DNA of 64,000 nt from Mizuhopecten yessoensis (taxonomy: Eukaryota). Positions 1 to 63,507 of this stretch are shown here, piece by piece (position 1 is the stretch's first letter; each line of letters starts with the position of its first letter). A program made the position numbers and the translations under genes. The notes under the pieces were generated by a model, which was given only the letters and a program-made list of their open reading frames with translations, was not told the DNA's origin and searched no databases. Location: contig NW_018408881.1 of NCBI RefSeq assembly GCF_002113885.1, forward strand, positions 1 to 64,000, written 5' to 3'.

Positions 1-289
1 TAACGCTGGCGCACGATTTATCTGATCTTCATTTAAGACATCAGACTGGTCTACTTGTATCAACCACAAGGTGCCGCATAAAGTCTTCGATTTTGAAAAG
101 ATATATTGCAGGGGTACAGAAAAAATAAACGTATCGACAGCTGAACCCTTTGATTTCGAGGATGTCAAAACGTAGGAATGTGAAATAAAAATAGGAACCC
201 ACATATACTGCCATTAAATAAACAGATATTTGCTTACTAATAGACATTGATCTATTTTTCATAGGGAGATTCTTTCTACAGACCAATAT

Positions 290-670
290 ATGCTTGAATC
301 AAATACACTTAATGAAAGGAAAGGAGAAACTGTAGAATTCATTACTCCCGGGTTACACATCCTCGTCCCCTCCAGGAGCGGAGGTTAGGTTTACTATAGT
401 GTATATTTGGGGGGAAACACTTTGTTGTATATTTTGTTATATTCAATGGGAAAGAGTTCACACTTGGTTGGAATGATTATCAAGGATTGCAGTCTTAAGG
501 TATGAAAGCTAACACCATGATTCACCCATCGTGCTTGAGGGGCGGGGCACCAGTAGGGTTAAATTGACTTAAATGACAACATCGAACCAAATTCTCTTCA
601 TGAATTCAAAGAACTTAAGGTGCTGTATCAAATTTGTGAATTTCATAACCTCTTGGGAGAGAATAGAACG
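290..670 (+). mobile_element. Fragment of Helentron/HINE-type internal repeat
   Basis: Shares blocks with 4310-5504 (gaatcaaatac, cttaaggtgct, ttgtgaatttcat, gaggggcggggc, aaattgact). Confidence 0.55.
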
Positions 671-1331
671 TCCTATATCATGATGAATTACATTATTATT
701 TCAGTTTTTCCAAAAGAATCCCGGCTACACATGTAAGTCAACCCCCAATATCATTATGTCAGGGAAACCGTCATCAAAATGACAAATGAGGCCTGTATGG
801 GCTATTTGTTTATGTCACATCATCACAACAAAAACACTATCATATTACACCCCAGGTAACCTTTATGGCCAATCGGTCTCTTTTTACGTCTAACTACAAC
901 ACAAACATACGAATGCTAACAGAAATATGATATTGTATATTCTCATCAATACATGGAGTCATTTTCAAATAATATAATTTCGTCATTACACTAACACTTT
1001 TAATTTATTTTTGTAACATACCCATGGAGATGAAAAAATCAACCAGGGATATCAGTTGATAAACGCTTACTTTTTCAAGTCTCGCAGACATCTCCAGATA
1101 GTTATTTAAATAACGTTACAATAATGTGTCGTAATCTAATCAATAATATGATATCGGGTATAAGGGGAGGTAATGACATTAAAAAGTTATATCTAAAATA
1201 TGTTTCTTTTATACCCTTTATCCCTTTAGATAAATAGTTTTTTTGCACGGTCAAGTTTACCGTGTCTTTCATTTATTTTATTCCAGTTGATTACGCACGG
1301 TAAAATATTTATTTTGGATATGTGCTTATCT

Positions 1332-1369
1332 AAAACCGAAAACGAAAGTACAAAATTAAGGGTATTTCC
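1332..1369 (+). promoter_or_regulatory. ISRE/IRF-element plus adjacent NF-kB-like site upstream of the putative first exon of the STAND-ankyrin gene
   Basis: AAAACCGAAAACGAAAGTA (1332-1350) matches the IRF consensus AANNGAAANNGAAA. GGGTATTTCC (1360-1369) is a near-consensus kappaB site. A strong donor AG|GTGAGT follows at 1488/1489. Confidence 0.55.
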
Positions 1370-1399
1370 GAGTAACGCAAATGTAACCTTGACCCTTCA

Positions 1400-1488
1400 C
1401 CAAGTCACATACCTTCATTAATGGATATCGACAAAAGTATGTATAATCTGCTGGCCAGATTTCAAGGCGGGGGGAGCTAGCCCGTAAG
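1400..1488 (+). other. Putative non-coding first exon (contains a 19-codon uORF, 1421-1480)
   Basis: Perfect 5' splice site AAG|GTGAGT at 1488/1489 could join the acceptor TTTAAG| at 2091/2092. The transcription start is not known, so the start coordinate is approximate. Confidence 0.4.
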
Positions 1489-2097
1489 GTGAGTATGACA
1501 ACATTATGATTTTTAGAACTTCAGTATGTCTGAGAGCGTTGCAAGACTTAATACATTTGTATACAGTCCTAAATTGTGTCCAATTACAGAATAAATATGA
1601 CAATACCTTATAGGGCTTGGCTATGCGGAAATGATTTTTGTAATACAATTGTTTCTAACGTATATCAAAGGGACAACTTCTGATTATATACATATATTAT
1701 ACTATATATATACATGTATATATATATACTGATATCAGATATGAATCTCTTAAATAAACTAGAAAAATATATAATGGTTCAATATAAACATAAATTGAAA
1801 AGCAGTATTTGCCTGCAACTGAATCGTTTTTTCTCTTCTATAGCAAATGTAAAATTATGTACGTATTTTACTAAAAGTTTCATTATGATTGTTTTCCTCA
1901 TATAGGACATAATCGGTAAACAAATTATTTCAATGCCCGGTTAACTATTGTGTTCAGTTAAGGAAAGCCAAACTGAACATTTTTACAGCTCAACATAATT
2001 CATATTGCTCACTTTCATACACATTATTTCGAGTAATTACCATGAAACCTTGACATTTGTTTATCGTATAGTATGATATGTTTCATTTAAGGTGACA

Positions 2098-2334
2098 ATG
2101 GGCGTGGATTTGGCAGTGTATCGTTCACGGGTCGGTCAGTTTGTGCCTCGACCAGTGAAGGGTATTGTGTCAAACATTGACTACCTTTGTAAAGCTATCG
2201 CCAGTGTTCGGGGTGGCCTGATACGACAAGATGGATTAAACAGCAAGGGAGCTGTTACATTCATTGGTCTCCTCCTGCGTGCACAGGGCATAGAGTCGAA
2301 CCCAGGTCCAGGACCAGGAAAGGGAGATGAACAT
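2098..2334 (+). CDS. First coding exon with 2A-like (StopGo-like) motif LLLRAQGIESNPG/P
   Basis: Translation MGVDLAVYRSRVGQFVPRP...AVTFIGLLLRAQGIESNPGPGPGKGDEH. Acceptor at 2090-2091, donor GTACGT at 2335. The canonical 2A is D(V/I)ExNPGP; here the D is replaced by G. Confidence 0.65.
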
Positions 2335-5300
2335 GTACGTTTAATTTCATAACTTAAATTACGAAACGTGTGGTATTTGTTCATACAAAACTGAATGAAT
2401 TTTGGTGAAGTCTGCTATCTGCAGGTGTTATTGGATTGCAGATGTACAAATATAATGAACAGTCATTCTCATTCTCTATTGACTTGGTCTAAACAATGCA
2501 AAATATTAGGCTTTAAACAGCATTGAAACCAGTCATATTGTTACCCGTAATTTCTTTATATATTTTTGTTGACATGTACTTGTTTCTACATTTTCAGTTT
2601 TTTTTAATAAAAAGCTTTCCCTTACAGTCATTTGCAGACGCACAGACGGAAGACAATGACGATATCAACATCACACTCGGTACGTTCGACACCACCCTTC
2701 GGATTTTAAAACAGTAATAAGACATTAGACCAGCTGATAAATGTTGTGAAAAACTTCTTGATTTTTTTTCTTTTCTCCCAAATACACGCTCAGTTTGATG
2801 TTTCTAAAGTATCAGTAATGCAGGGGTTTCATTACACAGACAGGAGAATATTTCTGGAGAAAAAAACATCGGTATTATAGGATTAATTCTCAGCCTCTCT
2901 GGACCTAGACTACACGATGACAAAATTGAGATGTGAAACGGTATGTTATCGGAGTTTAAGTAATATGATTAATACACATATAATAAATAATACATTATAC
3001 AAGTAAGTTATATTTTTGCAACTTTTAAAAGCAACCTTCACGGACGAATGTTGTAAAATTTATAAATATATAGATACCAGTCAGCTGGTATCATTAGCAA
3101 CAACGAAATTAAATTTAAAATCGTTACCAAAGATATACACTCAGTATAATTCACGCTCACGATGTGTACGTTTGTTGCGATATATATTCTATATATTGTT
3201 TGTCTTAAAAGTTCTCAATGGAGTTTTTGGTTAAATGTCTTTATTTTCCTAGACTAAATGCTCTCTGGGCTGCATTTATACAGCGAATAAAGCTAGTATG
3301 TAAAAAGGATTACCAAGAGCTAAGTTCTATTTTTGAAAATTCCCTAAATCAACATCGTTATAGGTATTATGTTATTTATACCCGACTCCAACAGTGTTGT
3401 AGCAAAGTAAATAATCCACGCGTTACAAGTAAAAATGTATACTGCATTATACTTCAGTACTGTGTTTATCATGGTTTTAAAGTAAAATATGTTGAGATAT
3501 TCTTAAGAATCTCTACCCTTTTTAAAAGACTCTTATGTACATCAAGTAACAAAACATAGAACATGTCAAGTGAAAATTAATGTAATTTGATCGTAGGCCT
3601 TGCAATACATCTTAAACAGTTTTTGAATGTGTTCAGTTATTCCATTACAGACAGTAACACTGACCCAAACATGGCTGACAGGATTAGCCAGTTTATGGAA
3701 TCTGTTCTACCTGTCAACAATCCCACCAATAATGGAAGTAGTCAAACAGACGAGTACGAAGGCGCAGTAGCAATACCTGGTCCTTCTTCCGGAGCAATTG
3801 CCAAAACAACCATTGTACCTCAAGGTAAAGTAATGAAACACTTTTGCAAAACAGTAGATAATGTGGATTCAACATTGGATATTTAATATCAGAACTGAAT
3901 TGTTCCATATAACCTTTATGTATATATAACAATAAATATCATGCTGTGCTAATTGTCGAATATTTAAGATAATGAGCTTTTCAAGTTGAGATTGTATCCT
4001 ATTTTCTTTTAATATATATATATATTGGACATATCTTTCAGTGGTGGTCAATTACCATGACAACAGAAAATATAATGAAGAGATTCGCGTAGAAAATATG
4101 AAAGTGAAAAACGCTGAAAATGTATGCACAGGACAGACTATCATCCATACTGGTTTGTATAGATTCAATCTTGTTACTGTTTTTTTTCCTAATTGTCCCT
4201 TGATATTTTATTCGTGAACACTTTATTTCGTGGTGAAGTGATTATCTTTTACAATGTTGATAGTTAATATTTATGTGTGGAATTAATATTCAAGAATAAT
4301 TAAAACTTGCAAGTGAGCTCCTTTTCGCCTTTTGGCCGGCGTCGTGCGTCCGTAAACAATTTATTTCGACCTCCTCTCCAAAACCCCTGCAGAAACCTGC
4401 CATGGCCAAAGATCAGCCAAACATGTCCAAAGGGGCCTGAGGGGCGGGGCCAAAAAGGGTCAAATTGACTAAAATTTCAAAAATCTTCTTCTCAAGATCC
4501 AGACATGGTAGAATCAAATACTCTTCATAGATGGAAGCATCTTAAGGTGCTTTACCAAAATTGTGAATTTCATGACCCTGGGGTCTCACGTTTCTCCCTT
4601 ACTGGGGAGGGGGTAAACTTTACTATAGTTTATATAAGGAAATCACATTTTGGACCAGTATTTGTTTAATTTTCATTGGAATTAATGCAAACTTGGATAG
4701 CATTATCCATATTCGATAGCAGTTTGATGATATGCACATATCAGCCCTGACTGGCCACCAGGGGCTGATGGTGGGACAAAAAAGGGTTGAATTGACTGAA
4801 ATTTCTAAAATCTTCTTCTCAAGACCCAGATATGGTAGAATATAATACTCTTCATAGATGGAAGCGTCTTAAGATGCTTTACCAAAATTGTGAATTTCAT
4901 GACCCTGGGGTCTCACGTGTCCCCCTATGGAGGGGTTAAACTTTGGTTTATATAAGGAAATCACGTTTTGGATCAGCATTTGTTTAATTTTCAATTGAAT
5001 TAATTCAAACATGGATAGCATTATCAATAATCGATAGCAGTTTGATGATATGCACATATCAGCCCTGACTGGCCACCAGGGGCTGATGGGAGGGGCCAAA
5101 AAGTGTTAAGTTTCCATTGGAATTAATTCAAACTTGGTAAGCATTATCAGTATTTGATAGCAGTTTGCTGATATGCACATATCAGCTCTGACTGACCCCC
5201 AGGGGCTGATGGTCGGGGCAAACAAGTGTTAAATTGACTAAAAATTGAAAAACTTCTTCTCAAGATCCAGATATGGAAGAATCAAATACTCTTCATAGAT

Positions 5301-8300
5301 CGATGGTCTTAAGGTGCTTTACCAAAATTCTGCTGACTGACAGAACCACTATTTGAACTACCCAGATCTTTCACACTACTTTTGCATTACATGTAGTTCA
5401 AGTTACCTTTTGTTACAAAATTATTTTCTTTTTCATTTGGCAACATCGATAACATCAGTTTTTACATAACTCAGGTGACCGTTAAGGCCCATGGACCTCC
5501 TGTTTATATTTCTTGGTGATGGATTATCATTATATCTTCAACATTGTTGTTGATTGAAAATGAAATGACAGTGTCAAATTTGCATTATTAGTTTTTAGAA
5601 CATACCAATACGATTATAGATTATTTCAAAGTTTTACTTAATACACGAACAATGTACATATCAAACGTGTCGCGACGTTTCAAGACCGTCTGCTATAACT
5701 GAGTGAGCGATTTGCATTGTTTATATGTACAACTATAAAACTACGTACTATATTCCATATGTCTCTGGACACGGGACGTTTCGCCTATCGATAGATAATA
5801 TATACACACTTTGTCGAACAGGTTACATATAAAATATATACAATCTCTTCACTCACTCAGTCATAACTTCACAAAGGGAGCAGTCGGTCTTGAAACTTTG
5901 CAACACGTTTAAAACTTTGATATGACATATTTCCAAACTGATGAATCTTATTGAAAATGATCTTAAATGAGTTTTCGGTTTTTATTCACTAGCGCCAACT
6001 GGCAATGAGGACGATGACGTTCCCAAACCAAAAAAGAAAAAGGAAGAGGAAAAAGAAGTTCCGAAAAGTGCCAAAAGAAATGCGTCTGAAGGTAAAATAT
6101 TTAAAAAGTTCCAATTACTGTGCATAACAAACGTTTATCCTGATAGCGATAAAATTACTATACAAACATGTTTAATGACAGTAGTGGTCACCATGTATGT
6201 ATAGCAAACTTGTATCCTGGTGTATTAGTTAGCATGTGATGGATGAAAGAAAAAATATTTTACATAACGAACACGTACATTAGTGAAAACAGGCAGCTTT
6301 TTAATTAACTGGGCGGTTTTCCCATGGGTTTCCCGGTAAAATAAGATAGAGAGTCATATAATGAACTCTTCCTCTACTTTCAACAGGATAGTGAACAATT
6401 GTGACAACCCCCAAGCTCTTCATATAGTACCACAGCCTTGCATCCTGTTGGCAGTTTGAATTAAAATTTAATCACCGTTACTCAAAAATGTGTATCCTGA
6501 TAACAACATAATGTCTTGAGTATAGGCACTTGAAGGAAGTCCGTTTTTCTTGTTGATGTAAACCATATAAAGGAAACCGCAAAAGTGACCGCTATAACAA
6601 AACTGAAAAGAAAATTTATGAACACCATTGAAAATATTACGATGACTGTAAATAGTGTTTTTTTTCAGCAACAGGGGAAGAGGATGAAAGCATTCCGGAA
6701 CCGAAGAAAATGAAACAGGCGAAGGAAGCAATTCTGAAAAGTCCCAAAAGAATAACTCTTGAAGGTAACATCCCGATGTTAGTTTGAACAGATGACATGC
6801 ATAAGCCAATTTGTCTGTACAACTCCCATTCTGCCAACTTCACCAGATGAAATATCAGTCGAGAATAATGCCGAGGTAGAACCAGTATCACATGACTTCA
6901 TTAATTTCCGCATATGTTAAATAATCCATTACTTTGCAATTGATAATAGACATATAACAATATGCACATAGTAATCTCTCGGGTAAGCATCCTGTGCACT
7001 CCAGAATCTGTGTTCAAATATATTTTTATCTGCGGTCTTGTAAGATCTTGAACTCTGACAGGTTAACCTTTGACCGTTCATTTTTCCGTTAAGGTTAACG
7101 TTGACTTCTAACATTTTTCCGACGGTCTTCAAATCAAACCCTAAAGTCGTTTGCCTCTCTCTGCCTTATATAATGGGACACATCTATCGTCTGCGATTTA
7201 TCTTTCAAGTGTGTAGGGATGTTTAAGAAAGTCTTATTGGGATACCTTGCCTTACTATGCCATTTCTTAAATTGGTTCGTTTCCGGCACAATTTTGATCA
7301 TACAAAAAAATGTAGCCCTACATTTCTTTATCGGAGTGTGAATTCGACTGTTTTAATTCAATGATGGAGATAGTTATTGTTAAATCCTGCTGCAATCCTC
7401 TTTTTTGATCTCTAGTGTATCATCAATATAGCTTTATACAATACCTAGACTTTTAGTCTGTACGGTCAATGTCTATGGTTTCTACATAAGACGTACTTCC
7501 CTTGCACCAATTGGCTAACACTTGATATACCTTGTTCCCCATAGCTGTGTCACAGCGTTGCTAATATTATTTGTTTAAAAAGATGAAGACCGTTGTCAAA
7601 CCATGTTGGCATAGACTTGCTTTCTTATGCCAGAAGTTTGAAATTTTAAGCAGTTCTGGATGTTACTGAGCGCTCGTGTGGAGGATATATTTGTGGAACT
7701 ACACACAACATCGTGTGCGGTAAGCTCTTCATCATCCAGGAGATGGTTAATGGAAGACACGCTTTCAGCCAAACCTTCTAGTTTTGAAACTATTGTAGTT
7801 AACAACCAACACAGTAGAAAAAGAAATACACCAAGTAAGGGCAAGGTTATCCATCTCCCCAAAAGATCTGTCTAAGAATTGCATCCAATACTCTTGAAAC
7901 ATTACATGAAAAACACGTTTATAATCAGTGTCCGACATGACATTTACACCTTTGTGCATTCGTGAAAGCATATCGTGATCTGGTTCTATTTGGGCATAGT
8001 TATTAAGATCTGATTGTTCGTCTTGTGAAGTTGACATCTTGCCTAAACACCTTTCGCGACAAAGTTACAAGCTTATATATTTTGCTGTGTTACATCAATT
8101 AATTTTACATCCTTTGTCACCCAGACAGAAAGAGCTTCAAAAATATTCTGAAATGATTGATTTCTATATCTTGTAACACGCAGAATAAAACCTTTTTTTA
8201 AATGCTTGCGTAATGCATCCATCTTTTCAATATCTTTTGTGCATTTAATTTGTCTAAAGCCACAACAGGATTTTTACTTTAATTTAATCTGTTTCCCAGA

Positions 8301-11300
8301 CAATGCTGAAACAATGTTAAAACGACACATCGAGGAAACAGACAATATTCTGGTGACTAGGAGGGAAGCTGTAACGGCAGTGGCCAATCGTCTGAAAGAN
8401 NNNNNNNNNNNNNNNNNNNNNNNNNNNNNNNNNNNNNNNNNNNNNNNNNNNNNNNNNNNNNNNNNNNNNNNNNNNNNNNNNNNNNNNNNNNNNNNNNNNN
8501 NNNNNNNNNNNNNNNNNNNNNNNNNNNNNNNNNNNNNNNNNNNNNNNNNNNNNNNNNNNNNNNNNNNNNNNNNNNNNNNNNNNNNNNNNNNNNNNNNNNN
8601 NNNNNNNNNNNNNNNNNNNNNNNNNNNNNNNNNNNNNNNNNNNNNNNNNNNNNNNNNNNNNNNNNNNNNNNNNNNNNNNNNGGTGTTTACATTTGGGCAT
8701 CAGTCAACTGCAGACAGTGTTTGTATTGTGTTTGGAAAAGAAAATCCAGAAATTATTTTAGAAAAATGTAGCAACCGTGTGATATTGGAACTGCTGGATG
8801 TTTCTGAAACTGATCAAACCGATATTTGCACCTTACATGTTCCTAAGAATTGCTTTGAACACCTTGTAAAGCGAATTTACAAGATGATTATTGAAGGGGA
8901 TGGAATAACACTAGAATCATTCCCCCGGTTCAAAAATCAAGAGCTTGCAGATTGTCTCTTAAAGTATATCACCACAATTGGAGACATACGAGCTTTCCAT
9001 CGAGCTCATTTAGGTTACTTTTCCACCAGAAGTCTATTAGAATCTTGTGCGAACAATGTTTTTTTCTTGAAAGCTCTTTTCAATTTCAAAGTTGATGAGT
9101 TCATTGTCAAAGAAAGCGGTATTTTGTTCTTTTCGAGAACATTACAGGGAACATTACTACGATCCCTAGAACATAAAAACAAGGCATCCATGTCTTTTCT
9201 GATTGCAAAGGGAGCGTTCTTAACGGAAAAATGTCTTCATGAAGCAATTAGTTCCAATGACGTGGACTTGACAGAGTTCGTATTATCAAGGAATATCTGG
9301 ATAAGATCAGAAATCAGAAGGTGCACCAAACTTGACACGCCAGATAATATACGTGGTGTCCTAGAGAGGGGAACCAGCATGTGCAAGGTACAGGAGATAA
9401 GGAATCTGTATCGCAATCAGAATTCATACCAAGCATCTACAAAACTATCACATATGAGTGCCAAAGATATGTCGACAGCCGTTGAAGCAATGGATTTTAA
9501 CACGCTACAAACGATTTTTCAGTCCCCGGGGTTGAAAAATCAGCATAATTGTCTTATAAAAGCAATCCTGGACAAAAAACACAAGCAATTAAATGATGCT
9601 ATCGCCATTAAAAGAATAGCTGGACAAATCGACGGAACAGTTGTCCAGTATGCGTTACATCATTGTGACTTGGACATGTTTCGTTTCTTACTTTTGTCAT
9701 CAAACATCAGTGCTTCACATCTGAACTCAGTGCTTTCTGAAGCCATTCATCTGAACAAAACTGACGAAATAGAAGTTCTGATCAAGGCAGGTGGACAACC
9801 GACTCTGGAAGATTTTGTGAACAAAGCAGGGACAACGTGTATGGGTGTGGAGTGTGTTGTTGAAACTATCATGAAAACCACATCATGGACACGTGAACAG
9901 CTTGATCGTGCTCTTGACGCAGCCGTGCGCTCCGGTACACATGCTTCAATGAAATTCCTTATCAAAGGTGGAGCAAAGTTTCTAGAAGATGCGTTGGTAA
10001 ATGTATCTAAAAGGCATTATGGTCCGGAAGTGGAGTATAAATACAAATTGACTGCTTCCTCTACAAAAGCAGATGATAAGCTGAGGGAACTTTTAGAAGA
10101 AGTTCCGGCAATAAAAATAGTAGCACAAGTTCACGCTACAGTTCAATATGTATTTTCGGAACACGAATGGTCGCAAAAGCAACTGGATGATGCACTTGAT
10201 GCTGCATTAGTATCGGGGTCAAGGGCAACCTTACAATTGCTGAGGCTCAGTGGAGGCACGTTTCACAGCAATGCTTTGTTAGCCGCTGTAAGAAACCTGC
10301 GTTATGCACTACCCATTGTTAGGTTTGTGCGAGAGTATGGGGAATGGTCAGTTGACCAGCTGAGCAATGCATTACACGAGGCTTTAGTCATTTGCAGGCC
10401 GGACTTTATTATTTACTTGAATGAAGAAGGAGCATTGTTCAATGATTCGAGTTTAAAAAATGTTCTTCGGTGGAAGGTTGAACAACATGTTCAGATCAAA
10501 CACATAAAACACATTCTTAAAGCTCGAACCTGGTCACCATTTCTGCTAGATGAAGCCATTGATTTTGCATGTGAAACAGAAGGACTTGCAATTCTTGCAA
10601 GTCTACCAATTGCAGAGGCTAGGTCAGAATCACTCACTAGAAATGTTCTTCTAAAATTACGAGCGGTTGGAAAGAAGAAAAAATGGATTATTCAGACGTT
10701 AAAAAGCAGAGGCATGGATGCTGATCTTGCTTTAGTTTTGAATTATGAAATTCAAGAAGGTTGCACAGACATTGTTGAACATCTTATTGGTGAGCTGGGG
10801 ATTTCCTGTGACAACGATGGCTTATCAAATGCCATGGACAACACCCGGAACTATCAAAGCTATGAGAGACTGAAAATGGTCCGTCTGGTGCGTGAATCGC
10901 AAAACTGGTCTGATGAGTTGCTGACGAGGGCGTTAGACAAAGCTGTTGGACTCGGGTACAGTGAGGTGATATTGTACCTACATACCCAAGGGGCCAAGTT
11001 CAGTGACAACAGCCTGGAGTACGCAATGATGCATAAAAATATAGGATACGAGCCATATGATTTTGTTACTTATATAATGGAATCACGCCATTTCAACAAA
11101 GAACAAATGAACAGTGCACTGACAAAATCTTTAGAGATTGGCCATTATAAACTCGTGACCATGTTTCATGAAAAGGGAGCAGAGTTCGCCGAAAAAAGCC
11201 TACAAAACGCAATCCGCAAAGAGTGGATACTCTCAGATCGACTCCCAGCAGTCCAGTTCATACTTAATGCAAGACGATGGGACACTGATGAAAAGAATGA

Positions 11301-11559
11301 CGCGCTGCACAAGGCTGTAAAGTTAGGGGATGTAAGTTTAATTGCTTGTCTTCTCAAATGTGGAGGAGAGGTGTCGAAACAATGCTTGTCCGAAATTCTG
11401 GAGAAGAAATGCAAACCGTCACATCGCCTCTGTATCGTAAGGCTTCTGCTCTCTAGTTCCCATTTTTTGGCACGAGAGCTAATTGAAGAGGCAGGGGTAA
11501 AAGCTAGGCAACTGTCAGAGCCTAAACTCGAGGCGTACATCCAGCAATGTATCAAGTAG
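2098..11559 (+). CDS. Spliced gene: 2A-like N-terminus + linker exons + putative nSTAND3-like STAND NTPase (core in gap) + ankyrin-like repeat region
   Basis: Exons 2098-2334 (phase 0), 2628-2679, 3651-3824, 4042-4152, 5993-6091, 6669-6764 and 8300-11559 are all GT-AG and give one open frame. ILVTRREAVTAVANRLK before the gap resembles the segment just upstream of Walker A in nSTAND3. FTFGHQSTADSVCIVFGKENPEIILEKCS...FEHLVKRI after the gap resembles the winged-helix/post-NTPase segment. Ankyrin-like repeats follow. Confidence 0.7.
4308..5504 (+). mobile_element. Non-autonomous Helentron/HINE-like element with internal tandem repeats
   Basis: 5' gtgagct...gtcgtgcgtccgtaaac microsatellite-like head, repeated internal blocks (cttcttctcaagatccaga...cttaaggtgctttaccaaaattgtgaatttcatgaccctgggg), and 3' end ctcaggtgaccgttaaggcccatggacctcctgtt (subTIR plus hairpin). 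Confidence 0.75.
5657..5923. mobile_element. MITE-like element with imperfect terminal inverted repeats
   Basis: catatcaaacgtgtcgcgacgtttcaagaccg...ctgagtgag on the left versus ctcactcag...cggtcttgaaactttgcaacacgttt...tttgatatg on the right. Confidence 0.55.
8300..11559 (+). CDS. Large terminal exon: STAND NTPase-associated region and degenerate ankyrin repeats
   Basis: Long ORF of ~958 codons after the gap with acceptor TTTCCCAG| at 8299/8300. Repeated motif W(S/T)xxQLDxALDxAxxxGxxxxxxxLxxxGAxF. Confidence 0.85.
8400..8681. other. Assembly gap (N run) inside a coding exon
   Basis: Run of n characters. Confidence 0.99.
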
Positions 11560-12146
11560 GGAAACGTCATAAACCTGGCGCCTATTCGATCTTGAAAATG
11601 GTTTCTTTTGGGAACAAAACCAGTCTATAATTCAGCATGCATGATATGATGAATATCATAGGATCACATGTATTATAAGAATGACAAGTTCATCTGTTTT
11701 AATAGAATAACATAACATGTTGATGCAGACGTCATTTATCCGGTTGCTGTAGTTTAGGAAACCCTGCCTTTCCAAAGCACAATTGTCCGAGCTATCCAGC
11801 CGTTTGTCATAGGAACGTCAGCGGCAGCAGACAGAAATGTTCTGTTGTGTCATGATCGCCAGGCAATAATTATGCTTAAGATGCAAAAACATAATGATTT
11901 ATGAGGATGACAGTGAAAAATCTTTAATAAACATTTCATAAGTCTTGCATTAAAGATGCAATTATTATTATGAATGAATGGTTTTGGTGGCAGAACACCA
12001 TGCAATTATTAGTATTGATCGACAATAGGTAAAAAAAAGAGATAATTAGACGAAAGGTGAAACATAAGGATTGTTTGACAAGAGGTAAAGCATGAGGATT
12101 GATTGACATTAGTTAAAGTATTAGGATTGTTTTTACAATGGGTTCA

Positions 12147-12583
12147 GCATAAGGATGGTACATGTATGACAATAGGTAAGGCAGTGAGATGGTTTGACAA
12201 TAGGTACAGCATTGAGATGGTACATGTATGACAATAGGTACAGCATTGGGATGGTACATGAATGACAATAGGTACAGCATTAAGATGGTACATGTATGAC
12301 AATAGGTACAGCATTGAGATGGTCCATGTATGACAATAGGTACAGTATTGGGATAGTACATGTATGACAATAGGTACAGCATTGGGATGGTACATGTATG
12401 GCAATAGGTACAGCATTAAAATGGTACATCTATGACAATAGGTACAGCATTGGGATGGTACATGTATGACAATAGGTACAGCATTGGGATGGTACATGTA
12501 TGACAATAGGTACAGCATTGGGATGGTACATGTATGACAATAGGTACAGCATTAAGATGGTACATGTATGACAATAGGTAAGG
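12147..12583. repeat. 34-bp minisatellite (~13 copies)
   Basis: Unit atgacaataggtacagcattgggatggtacatgt. Confidence 0.95.
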
Positions 12584-12640
12584 CATTAGTATTTATGATG
12601 CAGTGTAAATTGATGTTTGTGTATTACGTTCATCTCTGAG

Positions 12641-24613: not shown

Positions 24614-27600
24614 TCATTGGACAATCTGGAACAAAACGTTAAGCATTCATATATCACCGTTTCAATATGTGTATAATTGAATAATATAGTCCAACAATGC
24701 ATTCACTTCAATAAAGGTTGAATCCAGGACACAAACCTTCACTATAATTAACAATTCTGCAGTAATTTAAAAGAAAACAGCACTGACAGTTGCAAGTATA
24801 TTTTCAACATAATAAACTTTATTTAACCCTTTCACCCCTATGTAACTTGAGTGAACTCTACCATGCATTAATTTGGAAGAGTTCATTATGGCCTACTGTG
24901 GTGAAAGGGTTAACATTTTATTTTTTTTACTCATTCTTGATGTTAATGTCTTGCCAAACACCAGTTTCTGTAATGGGAGTGTGGTACACATTTCAGAATA
25001 ACAAATGTTGTCAATTCTAGCACTTACGTTTGTGGTGCAAACTTATGTATCTATATTGTTATATTGTATAGCATCTATCTTGCTTCTGATCTGAAAAATG
25101 ATTTCACCTCATATGTATCTAGCAATAAGCCCATGCCTGATAATAACCCCATCCATATCTATTTCAGTTTAGTGGAAATGCCAACAAATGCTATTTAAAT
25201 GTCCTGTCAATTTGCCCACAAACACACACTTCCAGTCAGAGACAATGTGTTGGCCCCCTGGGCTTATTGCAGGATAAATACGATTCTGAAATCAACCATA
25301 TGCGGACACCTGTACACTTGTATCTATTTATAGATCAACCTACTGTGTACTGAAAATTTCACCTGACATTGCATCCTCATCAACATCATTCTGCTGTGAC
25401 ACCAGCTTACCTGAAATTCGCTTACCTTCTGTCTATCATAAACATTGCATCCTTATAAACATCGTTCTGCTGTGACATCAGCTAAGCTGAAGTTTGCTTA
25501 CCTTCTGTTTATCATAAACATTGCGTCGTCATAAACATCGTTCAGCTGTGACATCAGCTAAGCTGAAGTTTGCTTACCTTCTGTTTATCATAAACATTGC
25601 ATCGTCATAAACATCGTTCAGCTGTGACATCAGCTTAGCTGAAGTTTGCTTACCTTCTGCCTATCATAGACATTGCATCGTCATAAACATCGTTCTGGTC
25701 TGACATCAGCTTAGCTGAAATTCACTTACCTTCTGCCTATCATAAACATTGCATCGTCATAAACATCATTCTGGTGTGACATCAGCTTAGCTGAAATTCA
25801 CTTACCTTCTGTCTATCATAAACATTGCATCTTCATAAACATCATTCTGGTGTGACATCAGCTTAGCTGAAGTTCTCTTACCTTCTGTCTATCATAAACA
25901 AACATCGTTTTGGTGTGACATCAGCTTAGCTGAAGTTCTCCTACCTTCTGTCTATCATAAACAAACATCGTTCTGCTGTGACATCAGCTTACCTGAAACT
26001 CGTTGCTCATTCCCATGAGGATGTTCTTGACCTTGCTTATGTAACACAGAACATATTTTCCCGGGTATGTAGGCATATCTTTTCCCTTCCAGGTCACTGT
26101 GATATTTGGTTGGCCCTTGTCTCCTGTGTTGCTCTCTGCGTACTTGTAGCTGATGTAGTCATTGTACGTTGCAAAGTCAGTCTGGCGTCAGGGAAATAAT
26201 TTTTTTACGAATTGCTTCTATGATTAAATACACATGAAGAGGGGGAATCTCTGAACAGCGTACATGTATCCGTACGTGTAAAATTTGCTATCAACTAAAA
26301 CATCTATCAAAATTGAACCAGTGGTCTTAATATTCCTTGAAAACATTTTATGTGTGGGGTAATTATTTTATCAATAATTAGAAGTTTAATATTAATTTAG
26401 AGATGAAAATGAGGTTATAGGCAAAATATAAAGCTGAGTATTTGATCTTTTAATCCTTGCTATAGGATTTTTTTTGAAGTTGCATTGCAATAAAATTCTG
26501 ATAAAAAGGCTGAAAAACTTCATTTCTGTATAAATAAACTTCATCAGAAGCTTATAGGTTTTATAGCATTAAAATCTCTGTAGTTACCGTATTTTACCAC
26601 AAATAAGTGCCCACCCCTAGTGAAAAAACATAGACAAAAAGTAGGGAGGGGGCTTAATTGCAAGCAACCCCCCTGTTCACAAATGTCCGCCATCTTGGAT
26701 ATATACCACTGTTTTGATCTATGACCACGCATGTATTTATTATACACTGTAGTTGTTCATGTTTGCGAGAGGGGGCTTATTTGCGGTAAAATACGGTAAT
26801 CTAGAGTATCTCAGGCAAAAAACCCCATCAATATCTGTATTCCAGTTAAACATTTATCATTGACACACCCTAGACAATTGGGCTATGAAATAGAGATTTC
26901 TTATAGACCTACAGAATAATTTTATAGACCAGACCTCAACGAAGAAAATTTTCCTTATGTATATGTATTTAGTGTTGATAACATGAATTCAGAAAATACC
27001 AGGATTCAGAAAATACTAGAATTAAAAAAATACCTGTAATAATAAAGGAATTAAAATAATTTAACAGAACGCATTTTCACTAACTGCAATATATTTATCA
27101 TTGAATTATATACACCGTATGAAATATCTTCATAGACAACTTGGTTTATGAAGTGAATGATAACCATGCATAGATCTACATTTTTTTCATGGCAATTGTC
27201 TATCTGTCTACTGTTAAGTTTAACCACTAAATACCAGTGTATATTTGTAAACCTCAGACTTTGGGACAAATATTGCTCACCCTGTAGATGCCTATCCAGT
27301 CCCAGGAAGACGAGGCCAGGTCTGGGTTGGTCCTGTAGGTGTATGTAACATCCACTTCTTTACCCAGCTTCCACACGGAGGGGACCTGGATTGTCACGAC
27401 AGGTGGGTTGGGTGGATGGGGAAACACCTGATGACGGGAATTAACAACTCTATTGGTGGTTTATTACTTACTTGCTTGACCAATACAGGTTCCTGGAAAG
27501 AATAGGGCCTGTTGTATCCTACTGAATGATTGTAAGAGGCGACTAATGTGACCCCCTCCTCCCCTACAGAATTTAGGATGGTTCCTTCCATTCATTCTGT

Positions 27601-30600
27601 TTAGAGGACAATGAAGAAACCAAGAACAGACCTGCTATATCCCACTGCATGTGTATCACAAATGGCTGCAAATAAGGGGCCCCCTGCAGAATAGGGTTTT
27701 TATATTCCATGTCTTCTACTAAGACGGCATGGAGGAGACCAACATTTGATCTGCTGCCCTCCTTTCAACACTTTTTCATTTCTTATCTTTCCTGGCTACT
27801 TTTATTGTTTGTTTTTTTTGTTCTCTCTCTTTCTGGCGGTGTCTCCCTAAGACTAAGAACCCATCCTCATTTTACCCTGAATGTTGCAAGGGCATTAGAT
27901 ATTTCCCAGAACTGTAACATGGCAAATTTCCATCCAGTTTCAATTTTGTCAATTAAATGAGAGGGTTAATTCAAAATGGATCAAAAGATAGTACTATAAA
28001 TACATTACATATATAATACATATTAATACGTCTTAATAATATGTTTGCCTGTCTATCAATCAAAGTATGAAGTCTAGAGTCATACTGAAGCTATTTTGGT
28101 TAAAAAGAATGAGTGAAAGTCAACACAATCCATTTTAAAATGTTGTAGTTTTTATACATAGTCAACAATTTGAATAATTTTAAGGTGCCTCTTCTGAGCA
28201 TTTTGTTCATTTTTGTACATTGCCACTTAGTCCGAATTATTCTGACCTTTTATCGACATTTTTCATATCGGTCTGTCGTCGATTAACGTCAGAACTACGG
28301 CCCTCTATAATATGCGGGAAATATGCCACCCACACCCGGAGCGCACTTCAAACTGATATTTTATAGACAAATCGTCACTTTCACACACATGTCGCACATG
28401 GATCGAAAAAGATCTATTCTTTATGCACAAGATGAACATACATAACATGCTTCAAACAACCAATACAATCACTAAAAACATATTTTTTCAAACTTACTCT
28501 GTTTTACTCTAGTTTTTTGATAGCCCCACCTTCTAATGCCACATGACTAAAATCTCGCCGGCCTACATCATAACGTTGGGAAATACCTTCGGTAACGCGA
28601 GATCTCGTCAAGTCATGTGACATTGCTCATGGCCTAATTTCCATTAAAAACATGGGTTGGTATAGAAATCGTTGGAAAATACCTTTCGTAATGATCTTTG
28701 AAACATGTTATTGATACCACCTAGTGCATAAAGAATAGATCTTTCGATCCATGTGCGACATGTGTGTGAAAGTGACGATTTGTTTCTAAAATATCAGTTT
28801 GAAGTGCGCTTCGGGCGCAGGGCGCATATTTCCCACATATTATAGAGGGCCGGAGTTCTGACGTTAATCGACGACAGACCGATATGAAAAAAGTCGATAA
28901 AATGTCAGAATAATTCGGACTAATTGCCACTGTCCAGGCTTTCAATAGACCCTTGAGACTGAGAGTATGTTCTTTAATCCCTAAAATGAGTTTTGAATCT
29001 TGGTTTTTGAAAGGACAAGTGTGTCTGAAATCGTTAAATGCCAAGGGTTAACAGAAAGCCCCGAGTTTTACCCTCTACTTCCGTAAATACATACCGGGAA
29101 TTGAAACTCTGAGACGACAGGTTTGTGGTCACTTGTCTTGTAGGAGGGTAGAGATTTGTAGTACAACTGTTTCACACTGAGATCAAGGTTCTGGAAGGAG
29201 TCTTCATGAACCATCCACAAGATCCTATCGCACCAGGCCGGCACACGCTGCTTCTCGCTGTATGTAATGTTATCATGTAATGAAATCAGAAGCCAAATCA
29301 CATTGCATCTAAATACATGTAGTGCTATAGATGAAATGGTGCTTTGGTAACTCCAGAAAAATACCATGGAAAGTAAATATAACAAGAATGATGCCAATTT
29401 TTATCAAATTAAACAAATTCTATGCACAGATACTTTTAGACTATCATGCTGTGTTTCAGGGTTTGTTATGAGAACAAATTTCTCATTGCGAGCAGGTCGA
29501 CAAAATCGAGAAGCCATTGCAGGCTGACTCAAAAATTGGCTGTCGTATGATATGTACATATATACCTTGTGTCATAAATGTCTGTGTCCGGGTCAAATTT
29601 GTAGGTCGGGGCAAACGTGATAGGTCCCTCTTCAAAGTCAGTGAATACCAGCCCTTCTTCTTTACATCTCAGGAGCTGAAGTGAATCCCATACCACCACA
29701 AGTTAAAATTTTATTTGTTAGTAAAATATTTTTTTATGTACAAAAGTTTTATTTTCTTATACATGTTTGTATTTAAAACAGATCAATTTTATTTACATAA
29801 CAGGAGAGGCAAATGCAGGGCCAGATCAGGATATGAAGCTGGAACTCTCCAAACTCTAAACTGATGCTCTAACAGATGCAGCCACCTGGTCGCTGTTGAT
29901 TATCCAGAGTCCAGTTCTGCTACATTATTCTCTCCATTAATTGTCAAAGATCAAGTCTTCGACCCCGAAGACACACAGGACCAGGTACCACCTAGACCTT
30001 CTGTGGGTTTATTAAATTGGGTGCAAAATGTAACGGGAGAGGAGTAATACATGGCCACATCAGGATTCGAACCCTTTAGACAGACGCTCTAACCTACTCA
30101 CAGCTACCTGATTGCCAGTGATAATCCCAGTCTAGTTCCACTACATTTATTGTTACATATTTGTATACAAAAGTATGTGATAAATGTATAACACTGAAAG
30201 AATCCTCAATGAAATTTAATCAATAAAATATATAAAAATCCAAAGCACACTACTGTACTACACCAATAATCAAGTTATCTCACTTTTATCATGAATCGCA
30301 TAAATGACTAAAATTAACAGATGGCATAATGCTTGGACACTTTAATAACCAACCTGATCCTTCTTGAGTAAGGCACTGTAATTCTTAGCTTCTATATCTT
30401 TTTCAACCTCTGATCTGCTAAGGTCATCCAGGCGGAAGTTCAGGTCTCCCATCCAAAACACATAGCTGGTTATAAAATATTAATCAAATAGTTACCTTGG
30501 ATTTCTATAGAAGTTCCGTCACGGTCTTATATTACTAAATAAATTCACGTCCGTTACATTTTCTTGATTTTGGCATAATGCCATCTTCCACAGTGTTTCT

Positions 30601-43448: not shown

Positions 43449-45086
43449 TTTTTAGCTCACCTGGCCTTATGCTGTGGTCTCATCCGGCATCAATATTTCA
43501 CTTTAAACAACTTCTTAATAACCAAAAGGCCTAGGGTGATGATATTTAGCCAGAAGCAAACTGGGATGAAGGGCTACCAAGTTTGTTCAAATAAATGACC
43601 ACCTATTTTCAAGGCCACTGGGGTTAAATATGTTAAAATTTTAAACAGCTTCTTCTGAATAACCAAAATGCCCAGGGTGATGATATTTAGCCAGTAGCAT
43701 GCTTGAATGAAGGGCTACCAAGTTTGTTCAAATAAATGACCCCCTATTTTCAAGGCCACTGGGGTTAAATATGTTAAAATTTTAAACAGCTTCTTCTGAA
43801 TAACCAAAATGCCCAGGGTGATGATATTTAGCCAGTAGCATGCTTGAATGAAGGGCTACCAAGTTTGTTCAAATAAATGACCACCTATTTTCAAGGCCAC
43901 TGGGGGTAAATATGTTAAAATTTTAAACAGCTTCTTCTGAATAACCAAAATGCCCAGGGTGATGATATTTAGCCAGTAGCATGCTTGAATGAAGGGCTAC
44001 CAAGTTTGTTCAAATGAATGACCTTCATCCATTTTCAAGGTCACGGGGTCTTGAAAAATCTTTTTAAACAACTTCTGAACAACTAAGAGGCCTAGGATAA
44101 TGATATTTGGCCAGTAACATGCTAGGATGAAGGGTTACCAAGTTTGTTTTAATGAATGACCTTTACATATATTCAAGGTTACAGGGGTCAAATATGTTTA
44201 AAACCTTTAAACAACTTCTTCTGAATAACCAAGAGGCCTAGGGTTATGATAATTGGCAAGTAGCATGCTGGGATAAAGGGCTACCAAGTTTGTAACCATA
44301 AATGACCTTGACAAACATTCAAGGTCACAATGGTGAAATATGTTTAAAACTTTTCAACAACTTCTCAATAACCGAAAGTCCTAGGATGATGATGTTTGGC
44401 CAGTATCATGCTTGGATAAAGGGCTACCAAGTGTGTTCAATTGAATGACCTTAACTTACATTCAAGGTCACAGGGGTCAAATATGTTAAAAAAACTTGAT
44501 ACAAATTCTTCTGAATAGTCGAGAGGCATAGGATAATGATATTTGGCCAGTAGCATGCTGGGATAAACGACTACCAAGTTTGTTGAAATGAATGATCTTG
44601 AAGTATATCCAAGGTCACAGGGGTCAAATATGTTTAAAAAAATACAAATTCTTCTGAATGGCATAGGTTAATGAAGTTTAACGACTTCTCAATAAGGAAA
44701 AGGCCAAGGGTGATGATATTTGGCCATTAACATGATTGGATGAAGGACTACCAAGTTTGTTCAAATGAATGACCTTCGCCCATATTTAAGGTCACAGTGG
44801 TCAATATATGTTTAAATCTTTAAATTATTTGTTCTGTATAACCAAAAGGTCCAGGGTAATGATATTTTGCCAAAAGCATGCTTGGTTTGAAGCCTATAAA
44901 CTCTGTTCAATCTAACGTCCTTGTTTGACTTTCAAGGTCACAGGTGTCATATGTTTAAATCTTTCAATAGTTTCTAATGAATCAAACACTGATATTCTGC
45001 CTGTAGCTGTATTTTAGTCCACTTTTAAAAATATAAGTGTGAGATTAATACCAGGTAAGCGATTCAGGCCCATTGGGCCTCTTGTT
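43449..45086 (+). mobile_element. Complete HINE/Helentron-like non-autonomous element carrying a ~141-bp tandem array (~10-11 units)
   Basis: 5' ttttagctcacctg, 3' caggtaagcgattcaggcccattgggcctcttgtt. Internal unit ...ataaccaaaatgcccagggtgatgatatttagccagtagcatgcttgaatgaagggctaccaagtttgttcaaat... Confidence 0.88.

Positions 45087-56677: not shown

Positions 56678-63507
<6,830 letters not shown>

What the first reader, a model, noticed from the sequence alone, without database searches (positions are those of the whole stretch)
1332..11559. Candidate immune sensor: 2A-like leader + cassette linker + STAND NTPase + ankyrin sensor under ISRE/kappaB control
Seen: seven in-phase GT-AG exons join a leader ending in LLLRAQGIESNPGP to a large exon with nSTAND3-like flanks and ankyrin-like repeats, and an ISRE plus a kappaB-like site lie upstream. 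Known: STAND NTPases with C-terminal repeats are NLR-type sensors, and 2A-like peptides occur in invertebrate non-LTR retrotransposons and in some invertebrate NLR/ankyrin genes. Inference: this is an infection-inducible NLR-like receptor in which co-translational skipping (or a signal-like role of the 2A helix) separates a short leader from the sensor or yields two isoforms. No recognisable death-fold effector domain is visible.
Basis: partly seen in the sequence, partly recalled or inferred. Interest (0 to 1): 0.85.

Follow-up and report, generated by a model that had tools for sequence, protein, structure and literature searches.

The report
Scallop STAND-ankyrin gene with 2A leader
This is a real scallop gene of a family that puts a virus-like "2A" ribosome-skipping leader in front of an NLR-like (nSTAND3 NTPase plus ankyrin) protein, behind a conserved interferon-type promoter element, and the same leader heads several other immune-type gene families in bivalves.

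Summary
Seven GT-AG exons (2098-2334, 2628-2679, 3651-3824, 4042-4152, 5993-6091, 6669-6764, 8300-11559) are in phase. They match, exon for exon, annotated proteins of four scallop genera.

- **Leader:** all full-length relatives but one begin with the same leader ending G-I-E-(P/S)-N-P-G-P. The exception keeps a 25-residue version.
- **NTPase:** the P-loop core is not visible, because it falls wholly inside the assembly gap (8400-8681). Relatives carry about 295 residues there, against 94 codons of N.
- **Gap flanks:** both are collinear, on the same strand, open, and about equally diverged from the nearest paralog. The shared frame is uninformative.
- **C-terminus:** the 958 residues after the gap model as an ankyrin-type solenoid.
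- **Promoter:** the ISRE-like element (1337-1348) is conserved upstream of relatives in three other genera and of a distant paralog. The kappaB-like site is neither conserved nor beyond chance.

New here: the whole roughly 60-70 residue leader (MGVD..YR.RIG ... FIG.LL..G(I/V)E.NPGP) is a separate exon. It also heads GVIN-like GTPases, Death, LRR and other nSTAND3 proteins in clams and ark shells.

Ribosome skipping, induction by infection and any sensing role remain untested.

The parts
1337..1348 (+). ISRE / IRF-E-like element CGAAAACGAAAG (extended conserved block about 1332-1354)
   Evidence: Occurs once in the window, against 0.13 expected. The same block, (A/T)AA(C/T)CGAAA(AC/GT)GAAAG(T/A)A, lies on the + strand upstream of relatives in Pecten, Ylistrum and Argopecten. 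A related GAAAGTGAAAGT lies upstream of a distant paralog.
1360..1369 (+). kappaB-like GGGTATTTCC.
   Evidence: Mismatch to GGGRNWYYCC at position 4. The loose pattern gives 6 matches against 9 expected. Not conserved outside the recent duplicate.
1380..1483 (+). Putative non-coding first exon. The start is not defined. The conserved donor GT is at 1484, with an alternative at 1489.
   Evidence: A donor C|GT(A/G)AG aligns in the window, Pecten and Ylistrum. An AG acceptor lies 5-7 nt before the ATG in all pectinid loci. Inferred; no transcript data.
2092..2334 (+). Leader exon. ATG at 2098; leader M1-G70 = 2098-2307; NPG|P skipping point between 2307 and 2308; donor GT at 2335.
   Evidence: 98.7% identical to residues 1-79 of P0002. 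Fifteen invariant residues, including QGIE.NPGP, across eight pectinid leaders.
2628..2679 (+). Exon 3 of the gene (second coding exon), 52 nt, phase 0 to 1
   Evidence: 100% identical to P0002 80-96. The same 17-18 aa exon occurs in four other loci.
3651..3824 (+). Linker exon, 174 nt, phase 1-1
4042..4152 (+). Linker exon, 111 nt, phase 1-1. Encodes the conserved motif Y.D.RKY.EEI.VE.MKVK.AENVCTG(E)QTIIHT.
   Evidence: No Pfam family.
5993..6091 (+). Lys-rich cassette exon A, 99 nt, phase 1-1
   Evidence: Duplicate of cassette B. Relatives have 0-3 such exons.
6669..6764 (+). Lys-rich cassette exon B, 96 nt, phase 1-1
8300..8399 (+). Start of the large exon (left flank of the gap). Equivalent to P0002 residues about 252-285, just reaching the start of the nSTAND3 match.
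8400..8681 (.). Assembly gap (282 N). In relatives this interval holds about 294-295 residues, including the whole P-loop core. Content here is unknown and was not filled.
8683..11559 (+). Rest of the large exon: about 110 residues of helical or winged-helix-like STAND arm, then an ankyrin-type solenoid. Stop codon at 11557-11559.
   Evidence: Open frame of 958 codons. 45-71% identical to the full-length pectinid proteins P0002-P0009. Pfam Ank_2, Ank_3 and Ank_4. AlphaFold pLDDT 81.5. Foldseek top matches are AnkB, ankyrin-1 and DARPins.

Best explanation
The locus is one member, probably in Mizuhopecten yessoensis, of a pectinid family of NLR-like genes.

Shown:
- One non-coding exon plus seven coding exons.
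- The first coding exon encodes a 70-residue leader that ends in a 2A-type motif, FIGLLLRAQGIESNPG|P.
- Next come an acidic or polar linker and two duplicated Lys-rich cassette exons, all phase 1-1.
- A single large exon follows. In every relative it encodes an nSTAND3 P-loop NTPase, a helical arm and a long ankyrin-type solenoid.
- An IRF-type ISRE sits just upstream of the non-coding exon and is conserved across genera.

Inferred mechanism:
- IRF-family factors raise transcription after an antiviral or immune signal.
- During translation the ribosome fails to form the Gly70-Pro71 bond. It releases the leader and continues, so the STAND-ankyrin protein starts at Pro71.
- A fraction of ribosomes may instead read through or drop off. 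In that way the leader would set the amount and the form of the protein.
- The ankyrin solenoid holds the NTPase inactive until a ligand or a modified host target binds. Nucleotide-dependent oligomerisation then signals through the N-terminal linker, whose partner is unknown.
For: - Exon phases and splice sites.
- Exon-by-exon matches to RefSeq proteins of four genera, and the same exon plan in their genomic loci.
- nSTAND3 at E = 1e-24 to 2.5e-26, and Walker A GVTGEGKT, in relatives.
- Ankyrin Pfam hits and an ankyrin-solenoid fold.
- The leader is conserved, with QGIE.NPGP invariant. The 2A part has low non-synonymous change (0.04-0.14) but normal synonymous change (0.22-0.48), so selection acts on the peptide.
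- G-I-E-S-N-P-G-P is a listed viral 2A core. Infectious flacherie virus AGIESNPGP is tabulated at about 99% cleavage (PMC8623073). Grusopivirus 2A3 ends QGIESNPGP (PMC11512398).
- N-terminal 2A-like sequences on sea-urchin NLRs skip and also act as signal sequences (PMC4981915).
- ISRE conservation.
- Oyster IRF2 and IRF8 activate ISRE reporters (PMC5557890).
- The leader also heads 'interferon-induced very large GTPase 1-like', PARP14-type RRM, Death and LRR proteins of other bivalves.
Against: - The P-loop of this copy is unseen, because it lies in the gap. The copy could be truncated or a pseudogene.
- There are no transcript, protein or induction data.
- Skipping was not assayed. A recent screen found that many Leu-rich eukaryotic 2A-like peptides give 'falloff' or reduced protein rather than clean skipping (bioRxiv 10.64898/2026.06.17.732966).
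- The ISRE is absent within 10 kb upstream of one Argopecten relative (L003) and of a Mercenaria nSTAND3 gene (L006).
- No effector domain is recognisable.
- Ligand sensing by the ankyrin region rests purely on analogy with other STAND proteins.
Confidence: 0.6

Rival explanations
1. The leader is mainly a translational brake or a targeting device, not a clean separator. Most ribosomes would stall and terminate at NPG ('falloff'), keeping a dangerous STAND protein scarce. Alternatively they would read through, leaving the leader attached as a hydrophobic membrane or secretory anchor, giving dual localisation as in sea-urchin NLRs.
For: - Eukaryotic Leu-rich 2A-like peptides often give falloff or reduced abundance. 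For example, LLLVLLVLLVIGGVEMNPGP gave only the N-terminal product.
- In most leader-bearing proteins the 16 residues before the motif are strongly hydrophobic (median Kyte-Doolittle 2.0), which is signal- or anchor-like.
- Sea-urchin NLR 2A sequences act as signal sequences when they are not skipped.
Against: - The window's own helix is only mildly hydrophobic (0.55).
- It resembles efficient viral 2As.
- The conserved N-terminal MGVD..YR.RIG part is not needed for a mere stall.
Confidence: 0.25
2. This particular copy is a broken or mis-joined gene. The gap would hide a deletion, or a join between two different paralogs, so no functional NTPase is made here.
For: - The N run is about 600 nt shorter than the equivalent interval in relatives.
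- The 5' half (841-4327) is 92-97% identical to the paralog, while the rest is 77-83%, so the locus is a mosaic.
- The database gene model for this locus (P0001) is a truncated 891-residue protein that starts after the gap.
Against: - The change in identity falls in intron 4 (about 4330-5600), not at the gap. The two gap flanks are about equally diverged, at 83% and 80%.
- All visible exons are open, with intact splice sites.
- Gap lengths in such assemblies are only estimates.
- dN/dS of the post-gap part is about 0.3.
Confidence: 0.12
3. The gene is not an immune sensor. It would be a STAND-ankyrin scaffold with another cellular role, and the GAAA-repeat element would be bound by some other factor or be a neutral relic.
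For: - There are no expression or functional data.
- No death-fold or TIR effector domain.
- The ISRE is missing from some relatives.
Against: - The family shows lineage-specific expansion in tandem clusters.
- The same leader is shared with GVIN-like GTPases, PARP14-type RRM proteins and Death-domain proteins.
- The IRF-type element is conserved while the flanking DNA has diverged.
Confidence: 0.1

Closest known systems
Sea-urchin (Strongylocentrotus purpuratus) NLR proteins with N-terminal 2A-like signal sequences (Roulston et al. 2016, PMC4981915)
   Same: A cellular STAND or NLR-type gene with a 2A-type ..ExNPGP motif at the N-terminus. The helix before the motif is hydrophobic. The proposed result is two products or two localisations.
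   Different: - The sea-urchin element is a 26-residue N-terminal peptide with D(V/I)ExNPGP.
- Here the leader is 70 residues (median 61 in the family), has a conserved N-terminal MGVD..YR.RIG block, uses G(I/V)E, and is a separate exon.
- It sits on nSTAND3-ankyrin proteins rather than NACHT-LRR proteins.
- It is shared with several other architectures in bivalves.
Viral 2A peptides with a GIE core (infectious flacherie virus 2A; grusopivirus 2A3)
   Same: The C-terminal nine residues QGIESNPGP are identical to those of grusopivirus 2A3. The core AGIESNPGP of IFV is tabulated as about 99% active.
   Different: The context is a cellular first coding exon, not a viral polyprotein. No viral or retrotransposon domain lies in or near the gene.
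nSTAND3 NTPases (Pfam PF20720) and other STAND/NLR-like sensors with C-terminal repeats
   Same: Relatives have a P-loop NTPase matching nSTAND3, followed by a helical arm and a long repeat solenoid.
   Different: - The NACHT match is below threshold, at 18 bits against a cut-off of 26.7.
- The repeats are ankyrin, not LRR.
- There is no Death, CARD, PYD or TIR effector domain.
- No solved structure is a close sequence relative.
2A-like peptides in ankyrin-like and death-domain proteins of marine invertebrates (bioRxiv 10.64898/2026.06.17.732966)
   Same: That screen lists ankyrin-like and death-domain proteins as the main non-transposon carriers of 2A-like peptides. It suggests they regulate expression.
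   Different: Its text names no bivalve genus and no GTPase, and it treats only the roughly 20-residue peptide. The long conserved leader exon and its spread across bivalve gene families are not described there.

Membership tests
2A / 2A-like StopGo peptide | C-terminal motif [D/G](V/I)ExNPG|P | tested here: met
   GIESNPGP at 2287-2310. Invariant in eight pectinid leaders. G(I/V)E in 67 of 68 family members.
2A / 2A-like StopGo peptide | Helix-prone, Leu-rich stretch of about 10-14 residues before the motif | tested here: met
   AVTFIGLLLRAQ precedes the motif; F55, I56, L59 and L60 are invariant.
2A / 2A-like StopGo peptide | Open frame continues downstream into a second product | tested here: met
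   In-phase exons. The same continuity is seen in annotated proteins of four genera.
2A / 2A-like StopGo peptide | Demonstrated peptide-bond skipping | not testable with these tools
   Needs in vitro translation or a cell reporter. Only literature on identical viral cores is available.
nSTAND3 STAND NTPase (PF20720) | Profile match above the gathering score | tested here: inconclusive
   The window flanks give no hit, because the domain-equivalent interval lies in the gap. Relatives score 87-93 bits against a cut-off of 27.2.
nSTAND3 STAND NTPase (PF20720) | Walker A GxxxxGK[ST] and Walker B hhhhDD | not testable with these tools
   Hidden in 8400-8681, which was not filled by instruction. Nine relatives have GVTGEGKT, and V99, D100 and D101 are invariant.
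nSTAND3 STAND NTPase (PF20720) | C-terminal repeat (sensor) region after a helical arm | tested here: met
NLR in the strict sense (NACHT + LRR) | NACHT domain above threshold and LRR repeats | tested here: not met
   NACHT scores 18 bits against a cut-off of 26.7 in relatives. The repeats are ankyrin, not LRR.
Ankyrin-repeat protein | Ank profile match and ankyrin solenoid fold | tested here: met
   Ank_2 43.7 bits (cut-off 27.3) and Ank_3 39.2 bits (cut-off 22.3). Foldseek best hits are 4rlv and 8cs9 ankyrins, E = 5e-8.
ISRE / IRF-binding element | GAAANNGAAA(G/C)(T/C) near the transcription start, conserved among relatives | tested here: met
   Absent from L003 and L006.
ISRE / IRF-binding element | IRF binding and induction by an immune stimulus | not testable with these tools
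   Needs EMSA, reporter assays and challenge RNA-seq.
NF-kappaB site | GGGRNWYYCC, more frequent than chance or conserved | tested here: not met
   T at position 4. 6 matches against 9 expected for the loose pattern. Not conserved in Pecten or Argopecten.

The most novel reading that the evidence does not exclude
The roughly 60-70 residue 'MGVD..YR.RIG ... hydrophobic helix ... G(I/V)ExNPGP' leader may be a bivalve-wide N-terminal module encoded by its own exon. Exon shuffling would have placed it in front of at least five unrelated immune-type architectures: nSTAND3-ankyrin, GVIN/URGCP-like GTPases with PARP14-type RRMs, Death, LRR and zinc-finger proteins. On this reading, co-translational 2A recoding is a shared control layer of bivalve innate immunity. 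It would set the dose or the location of potentially self-damaging effectors. The released leader peptide may have a function of its own.
Probability: 0.4. Interest if true: 0.8.

Novelty: new variant of a known kind. Interest (0 to 1): 0.66.

Why it matters
2A recoding is a standard tool taken from viruses, but its natural role in cellular genes is almost unknown. A conserved leader shared by several expanded immune-type families in bivalves would give a tractable natural system for two questions: why a cell splits, or throttles, an immune receptor during translation, and how such a module spreads between genes. Together with the conserved IRF-type element, it also points to a concrete candidate antiviral gene set in commercially important scallops and clams. 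Bivalves lack antibody-based immunity and suffer mass viral mortalities.

Tried and rejected
- **Joined protein:** by instruction I did not build or search the joined spliced protein. Every exon was translated and searched by reference.
- **Gap:** it was not filled. The paralog locus L007 was used only for its flanks, promoter, introns and the length of the interval.
- **Pfam on the gap flanks and on exon 1:** no family.
- **Locus look-ups:** P0002, P0058 and P0007 are not on record, being shorter isoforms. I used P0099 and P0097 instead.
- **Paralog NTPase region:** the PDB sequence search found only generic P-loop hits. The AlphaFold model was unusable, with pLDDT 36, so no fold search was made on it.
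- **Transposon or viral origin of the leader:** none of 30 longer leader-bearing proteins scanned has a reverse transcriptase, endonuclease or capsid domain. Three multi-NPGP hits (P0025, P0054, P0057) match only the 2A part and have no Pfam family.
- **N-myristoylation:** the window's MGVDLA fits the PROSITE rule (recalled from memory), but most family members (MGVDIQ, MGVDIE) do not. I dropped it as a general explanation.
- **Linker:** lenient Pfam scans gave only sub-threshold hits.
- **Bacterial promoter/terminator scan:** irrelevant for an animal gene.
- **Statistics:** a Markov simulation timed out and was replaced by an analytic expectation.
- **Literature:** searches found no description of this bivalve leader. 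The ranking was swamped by unrelated bivalve papers, so absence is not proven.
- **Human sequence:** no contig was taken for human.
Full report
**What is in the sequence**

Reading 1-12500 and computing phases gives seven coding exons with AG acceptors and GT donors.
- Exon 1 is 2098(ATG)-2334, 237 nt, phase 0.
- Exon 2 is 2628-2679, 52 nt.
- Exons 3 to 6 are 3651-3824, 4042-4152, 5993-6091 and 6669-6764. Each is a multiple of three and phase 1-1.
- The last exon starts at 8300. Across the gap it continues to the stop at 11557-11559.

My first guessed borders were off by one base in several places and were corrected. Exon 1 encodes a leader that ends ...KGAVTFIGLLLRAQGIESNPG|P. NPGP occupies 2299-2310, so the leader is M1-G70 and the next product would start at Pro71. 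By instruction I never joined the exons into one protein; each was handled by reference.

**The gap, tested first**

The only N run in the window is 8400-8681, 282 bases.
- The left flank (8300-8399) and the right flank (8683-11556) are both open on the + strand.
- tblastn places them collinearly on the same relatives. The left flank ends at P0002 residue 285 and the right flank starts at 581. On P0004 and P0005 the intervening interval is 294 residues.
- In the relatives' own genomes this whole part is one uninterrupted exon of 3.75-3.9 kb.
- In the closest paralog locus (L007) 879 nt separate the two matching points.

So the gap is about 600 nt too short if this copy is intact. The fact that 282 is a multiple of three says nothing. 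The two flanks are 83% and 80% identical in DNA to L007. The jump from 92-97% to about 80% identity happens earlier, in intron 4. I see no sign that the gap joins two different genes, but I cannot show continuity or frame.

**Relatives**

The post-gap ORF finds RefSeq proteins of Mizuhopecten yessoensis (71% identity), Pecten maximus, Ylistrum balloti and Argopecten irradians. The full-length ones are 1449-1547 residues, and nearly all hits carry PF20720 nSTAND3 plus Ank.
- Six of the seven full-length RefSeq relatives begin MGVDLA(V/L)YR... and reach QGIE(P/S)NPGP at residues 64-71. One isoform, P0003, keeps only a 25-residue version.
- nSTAND3 covers 276-438 in P0002 and 234-399 in P0004, with Walker A GVTGEGKT.
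- The window's gene model in the database (P0001) is an 891-residue fragment that starts after the gap. The annotation was evidently broken by the gap.
- The genomic loci of the relatives share the exon plan: a leader exon, an 18-residue exon, two linker exons, 0-3 short Lys-rich cassette exons, then the big exon.
- The window's two cassette exons are duplicates of each other.

**C-terminal part**

Pfam gives Ank_2 (E = 4.3e-11), Ank_3 and Ank_4 above threshold. An AlphaFold model built on 12 aligned sequences has a mean pLDDT of 81.5. It is an all-helical solenoid with a unit of about 60 residues. Foldseek against the PDB ranks 24-repeat ankyrin-B, ankyrin-1, DARPins, NOMPC and latrotoxin first, at E = 5e-8 and worse. 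TM-scores are low, as expected for long curved solenoids. The first roughly 110 residues after the gap are a helical or small-strand region, not ankyrin.

**Promoter**

CGAAAACGAAAG at 1337-1348 is the only match to CGAAANNGAAAG in the window, against 0.13 expected.
- The same block lies on the + strand upstream of the relatives in Pecten (-748/-742), Ylistrum (-2483) and Argopecten L004 (-2089, -1957). The surrounding DNA there is only 53% identical per column.
- A naive chance estimate for 3 of 4 loci is about 1e-9. Because the loci are homologous, the proper reading is a phylogenetic footprint, not independent hits.
- A distant M. yessoensis paralog (L008) has GAAAGTGAAAGT at -2668.
- L003, and a Mercenaria nSTAND3 gene (L006), have none within 10 kb.
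- A donor C|GT(A/G)AG about 140 nt downstream of the ISRE (1484 in the window) is shared by the window, Pecten and Ylistrum. An AG 5-7 nt before the ATG is conserved in all pectinid loci. Together these fit a non-coding first exon with the ISRE just upstream of it.
- Oyster IRF2 and IRF8 activate ISRE reporters (PMC5557890), so the element has a plausible reader in bivalves.

The kappaB-like site fails the consensus. It is not enriched and not conserved.

**The 5' half is a recent copy**

Window 841-4327 covers the promoter, the non-coding exon, exons 1-4 and their introns. It is 92-97% identical to L007, while everything from intron 4 onward is 77-83% identical. The 98.7% identity of exon 1 to P0002 therefore reflects a recent duplication or gene conversion, with a breakpoint in the repeat-rich intron 4. 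It does not reflect extreme constraint.

Constraint is better judged between genera. dN/dS is 0.26-0.40 for the leader and 0.29-0.30 for the post-gap part. The last 22 codons of the leader show non-synonymous change of 0.04-0.14 with synonymous change of 0.22-0.48. Selection is therefore on the peptide.

**The leader is a wider module**

A profile of eight pectinid leaders, searched against 1.84 billion representative proteins, gave 81 hits.
- 68 hits have both an N-terminal M..D..YR.RIG block and a later NPGP.
- 67 of those 68 use G(I/V)E rather than D(V/I)E.
- The median leader length is 61 residues.
- The 16 residues before the motif are strongly hydrophobic in most members: median Kyte-Doolittle 2.0, against 0.55 for the window.

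Named hits are all bivalves: Mizuhopecten, Argopecten, Pecten, Tegillarca, Mercenaria, Ruditapes and Mya. The following domains come after the leader.

| Downstream architecture | Examples |
|---|---|
| nSTAND3 | P0047 |
| PARP14-type RRMs with URGCP and URGCP_GTPase; two are named 'interferon-induced very large GTPase 1-like' | P0058, P0071 |
| Death | P0026, P0032 |
| LRR | P0078, P0081, P0091 |
| C2H2 zinc fingers | P0073 |

No reverse transcriptase, endonuclease or capsid domain was found. In the Mercenaria GVIN-like gene (L005) and the Mercenaria nSTAND3 gene (L006) the leader is again an exon of its own, ending a few codons after NPGP.

**Comparison with what is known**

- N-terminal 2A-like sequences on sea-urchin NLRs skip and double as signal sequences (PMC4981915).
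- GIESNPGP is a known viral 2A core.
- A 2026 preprint lists ankyrin-like and death-domain proteins among the carriers of eukaryotic 2A-like peptides. It reports that many Leu-rich ones cause falloff or reduced protein.
- I found no description of the long bivalve leader or of its spread across families. The searches cannot prove absence.

**Verdict**

The gene model and most of the observation are right. The NTPase of this copy is unseen. The kappaB claim fails. The ISRE claim is strengthened. Function as an inducible sensor, and the outcome at the 2A site, remain inference. The finding is a new variant of a known kind, and the shared leader module is its most interesting aspect.

Noticed in passing
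window 841-4327 versus L007 4544-8222: The whole 5' half of the gene, introns and promoter included, is 92-97% identical to the paralog LOC110453317, while the 3' half is only about 80% identical. The switch lies in repeat-rich intron 4, which suggests recent gene conversion or a mosaic duplication.
   Followed up: partly
window 4042-4152: Exon 4 encodes the best-conserved part of the linker, Y.D.RKY.EEI.VE.MKVK.AENVCTG(E)QTIIHT, with no Pfam family. From memory only, the TG.Q.I core loosely recalls RHIM-like or amyloid signalling motifs of other NLR systems. This was not tested.
   Followed up: partly
window 4300-5330 and 360-700: Several copies of a repeat of roughly 330 bp (GGGGCGGGGCCAAAAAGGGT..AAATTGACT..TTCATGACCC..) fill intron 4. 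A related copy lies upstream of the gene, and the same element is repeated in the paralog's intron. It is probably a SINE- or MITE-like element.
   Followed up: no
window 6101-8283, minus-strand ORFs 7596-7862 and 7765-8037: Intron 6 has no counterpart in the paralog locus. It carries two overlapping minus-strand ORFs of 88-90 residues with no Pfam family, possibly an inserted element.
   Followed up: partly
window 1422-1481: A short upstream ORF (MDIDKSMYNLLARFQGGGS, then a stop) lies in the putative non-coding first exon. A second annotated gene model in the paralog locus starts at the equivalent place (L007 5142).
   Followed up: no
window 58514-58834 (-) and 60087-60416 (-): Two exons of a PP1-type serine/threonine phosphatase catalytic subunit (Metallophos, E = 9e-12 and 2.5e-20).
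   Followed up: partly
window 29068-29397 (-): An exon with an inositol-polyphosphate 5-phosphatase-like end (Exo_endo_phos2, E = 1.6e-13..PAWCDRILW..DHKPV..).
   Followed up: partly
window 12135-12587, 25366-25963, 43502-44659, 50253-53908: Satellite arrays: 34 bp x 13.5 directly after the gene's 3' end, 76 bp x 7, 141 bp x 8, and a 3.7-kb array of a 34-bp unit (108 copies).
   Followed up: no
L004 1-6067 (-) and 10001-19616 (+); L002 1-2649; L007 20250-21227: Family members sit in clusters. There is a divergent pair in Argopecten and tandem copies in Ylistrum and Mizuhopecten. The window itself holds only one copy in 64 kb.
   Followed up: partly
L005 about 5749 (-4253 from the ATG): The Mercenaria GVIN-like gene that carries the leader has a vertebrate-style GGAAACCGAAACC about 4.2 kb upstream. 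Whether it lies near that gene's start site is unknown.
   Followed up: no
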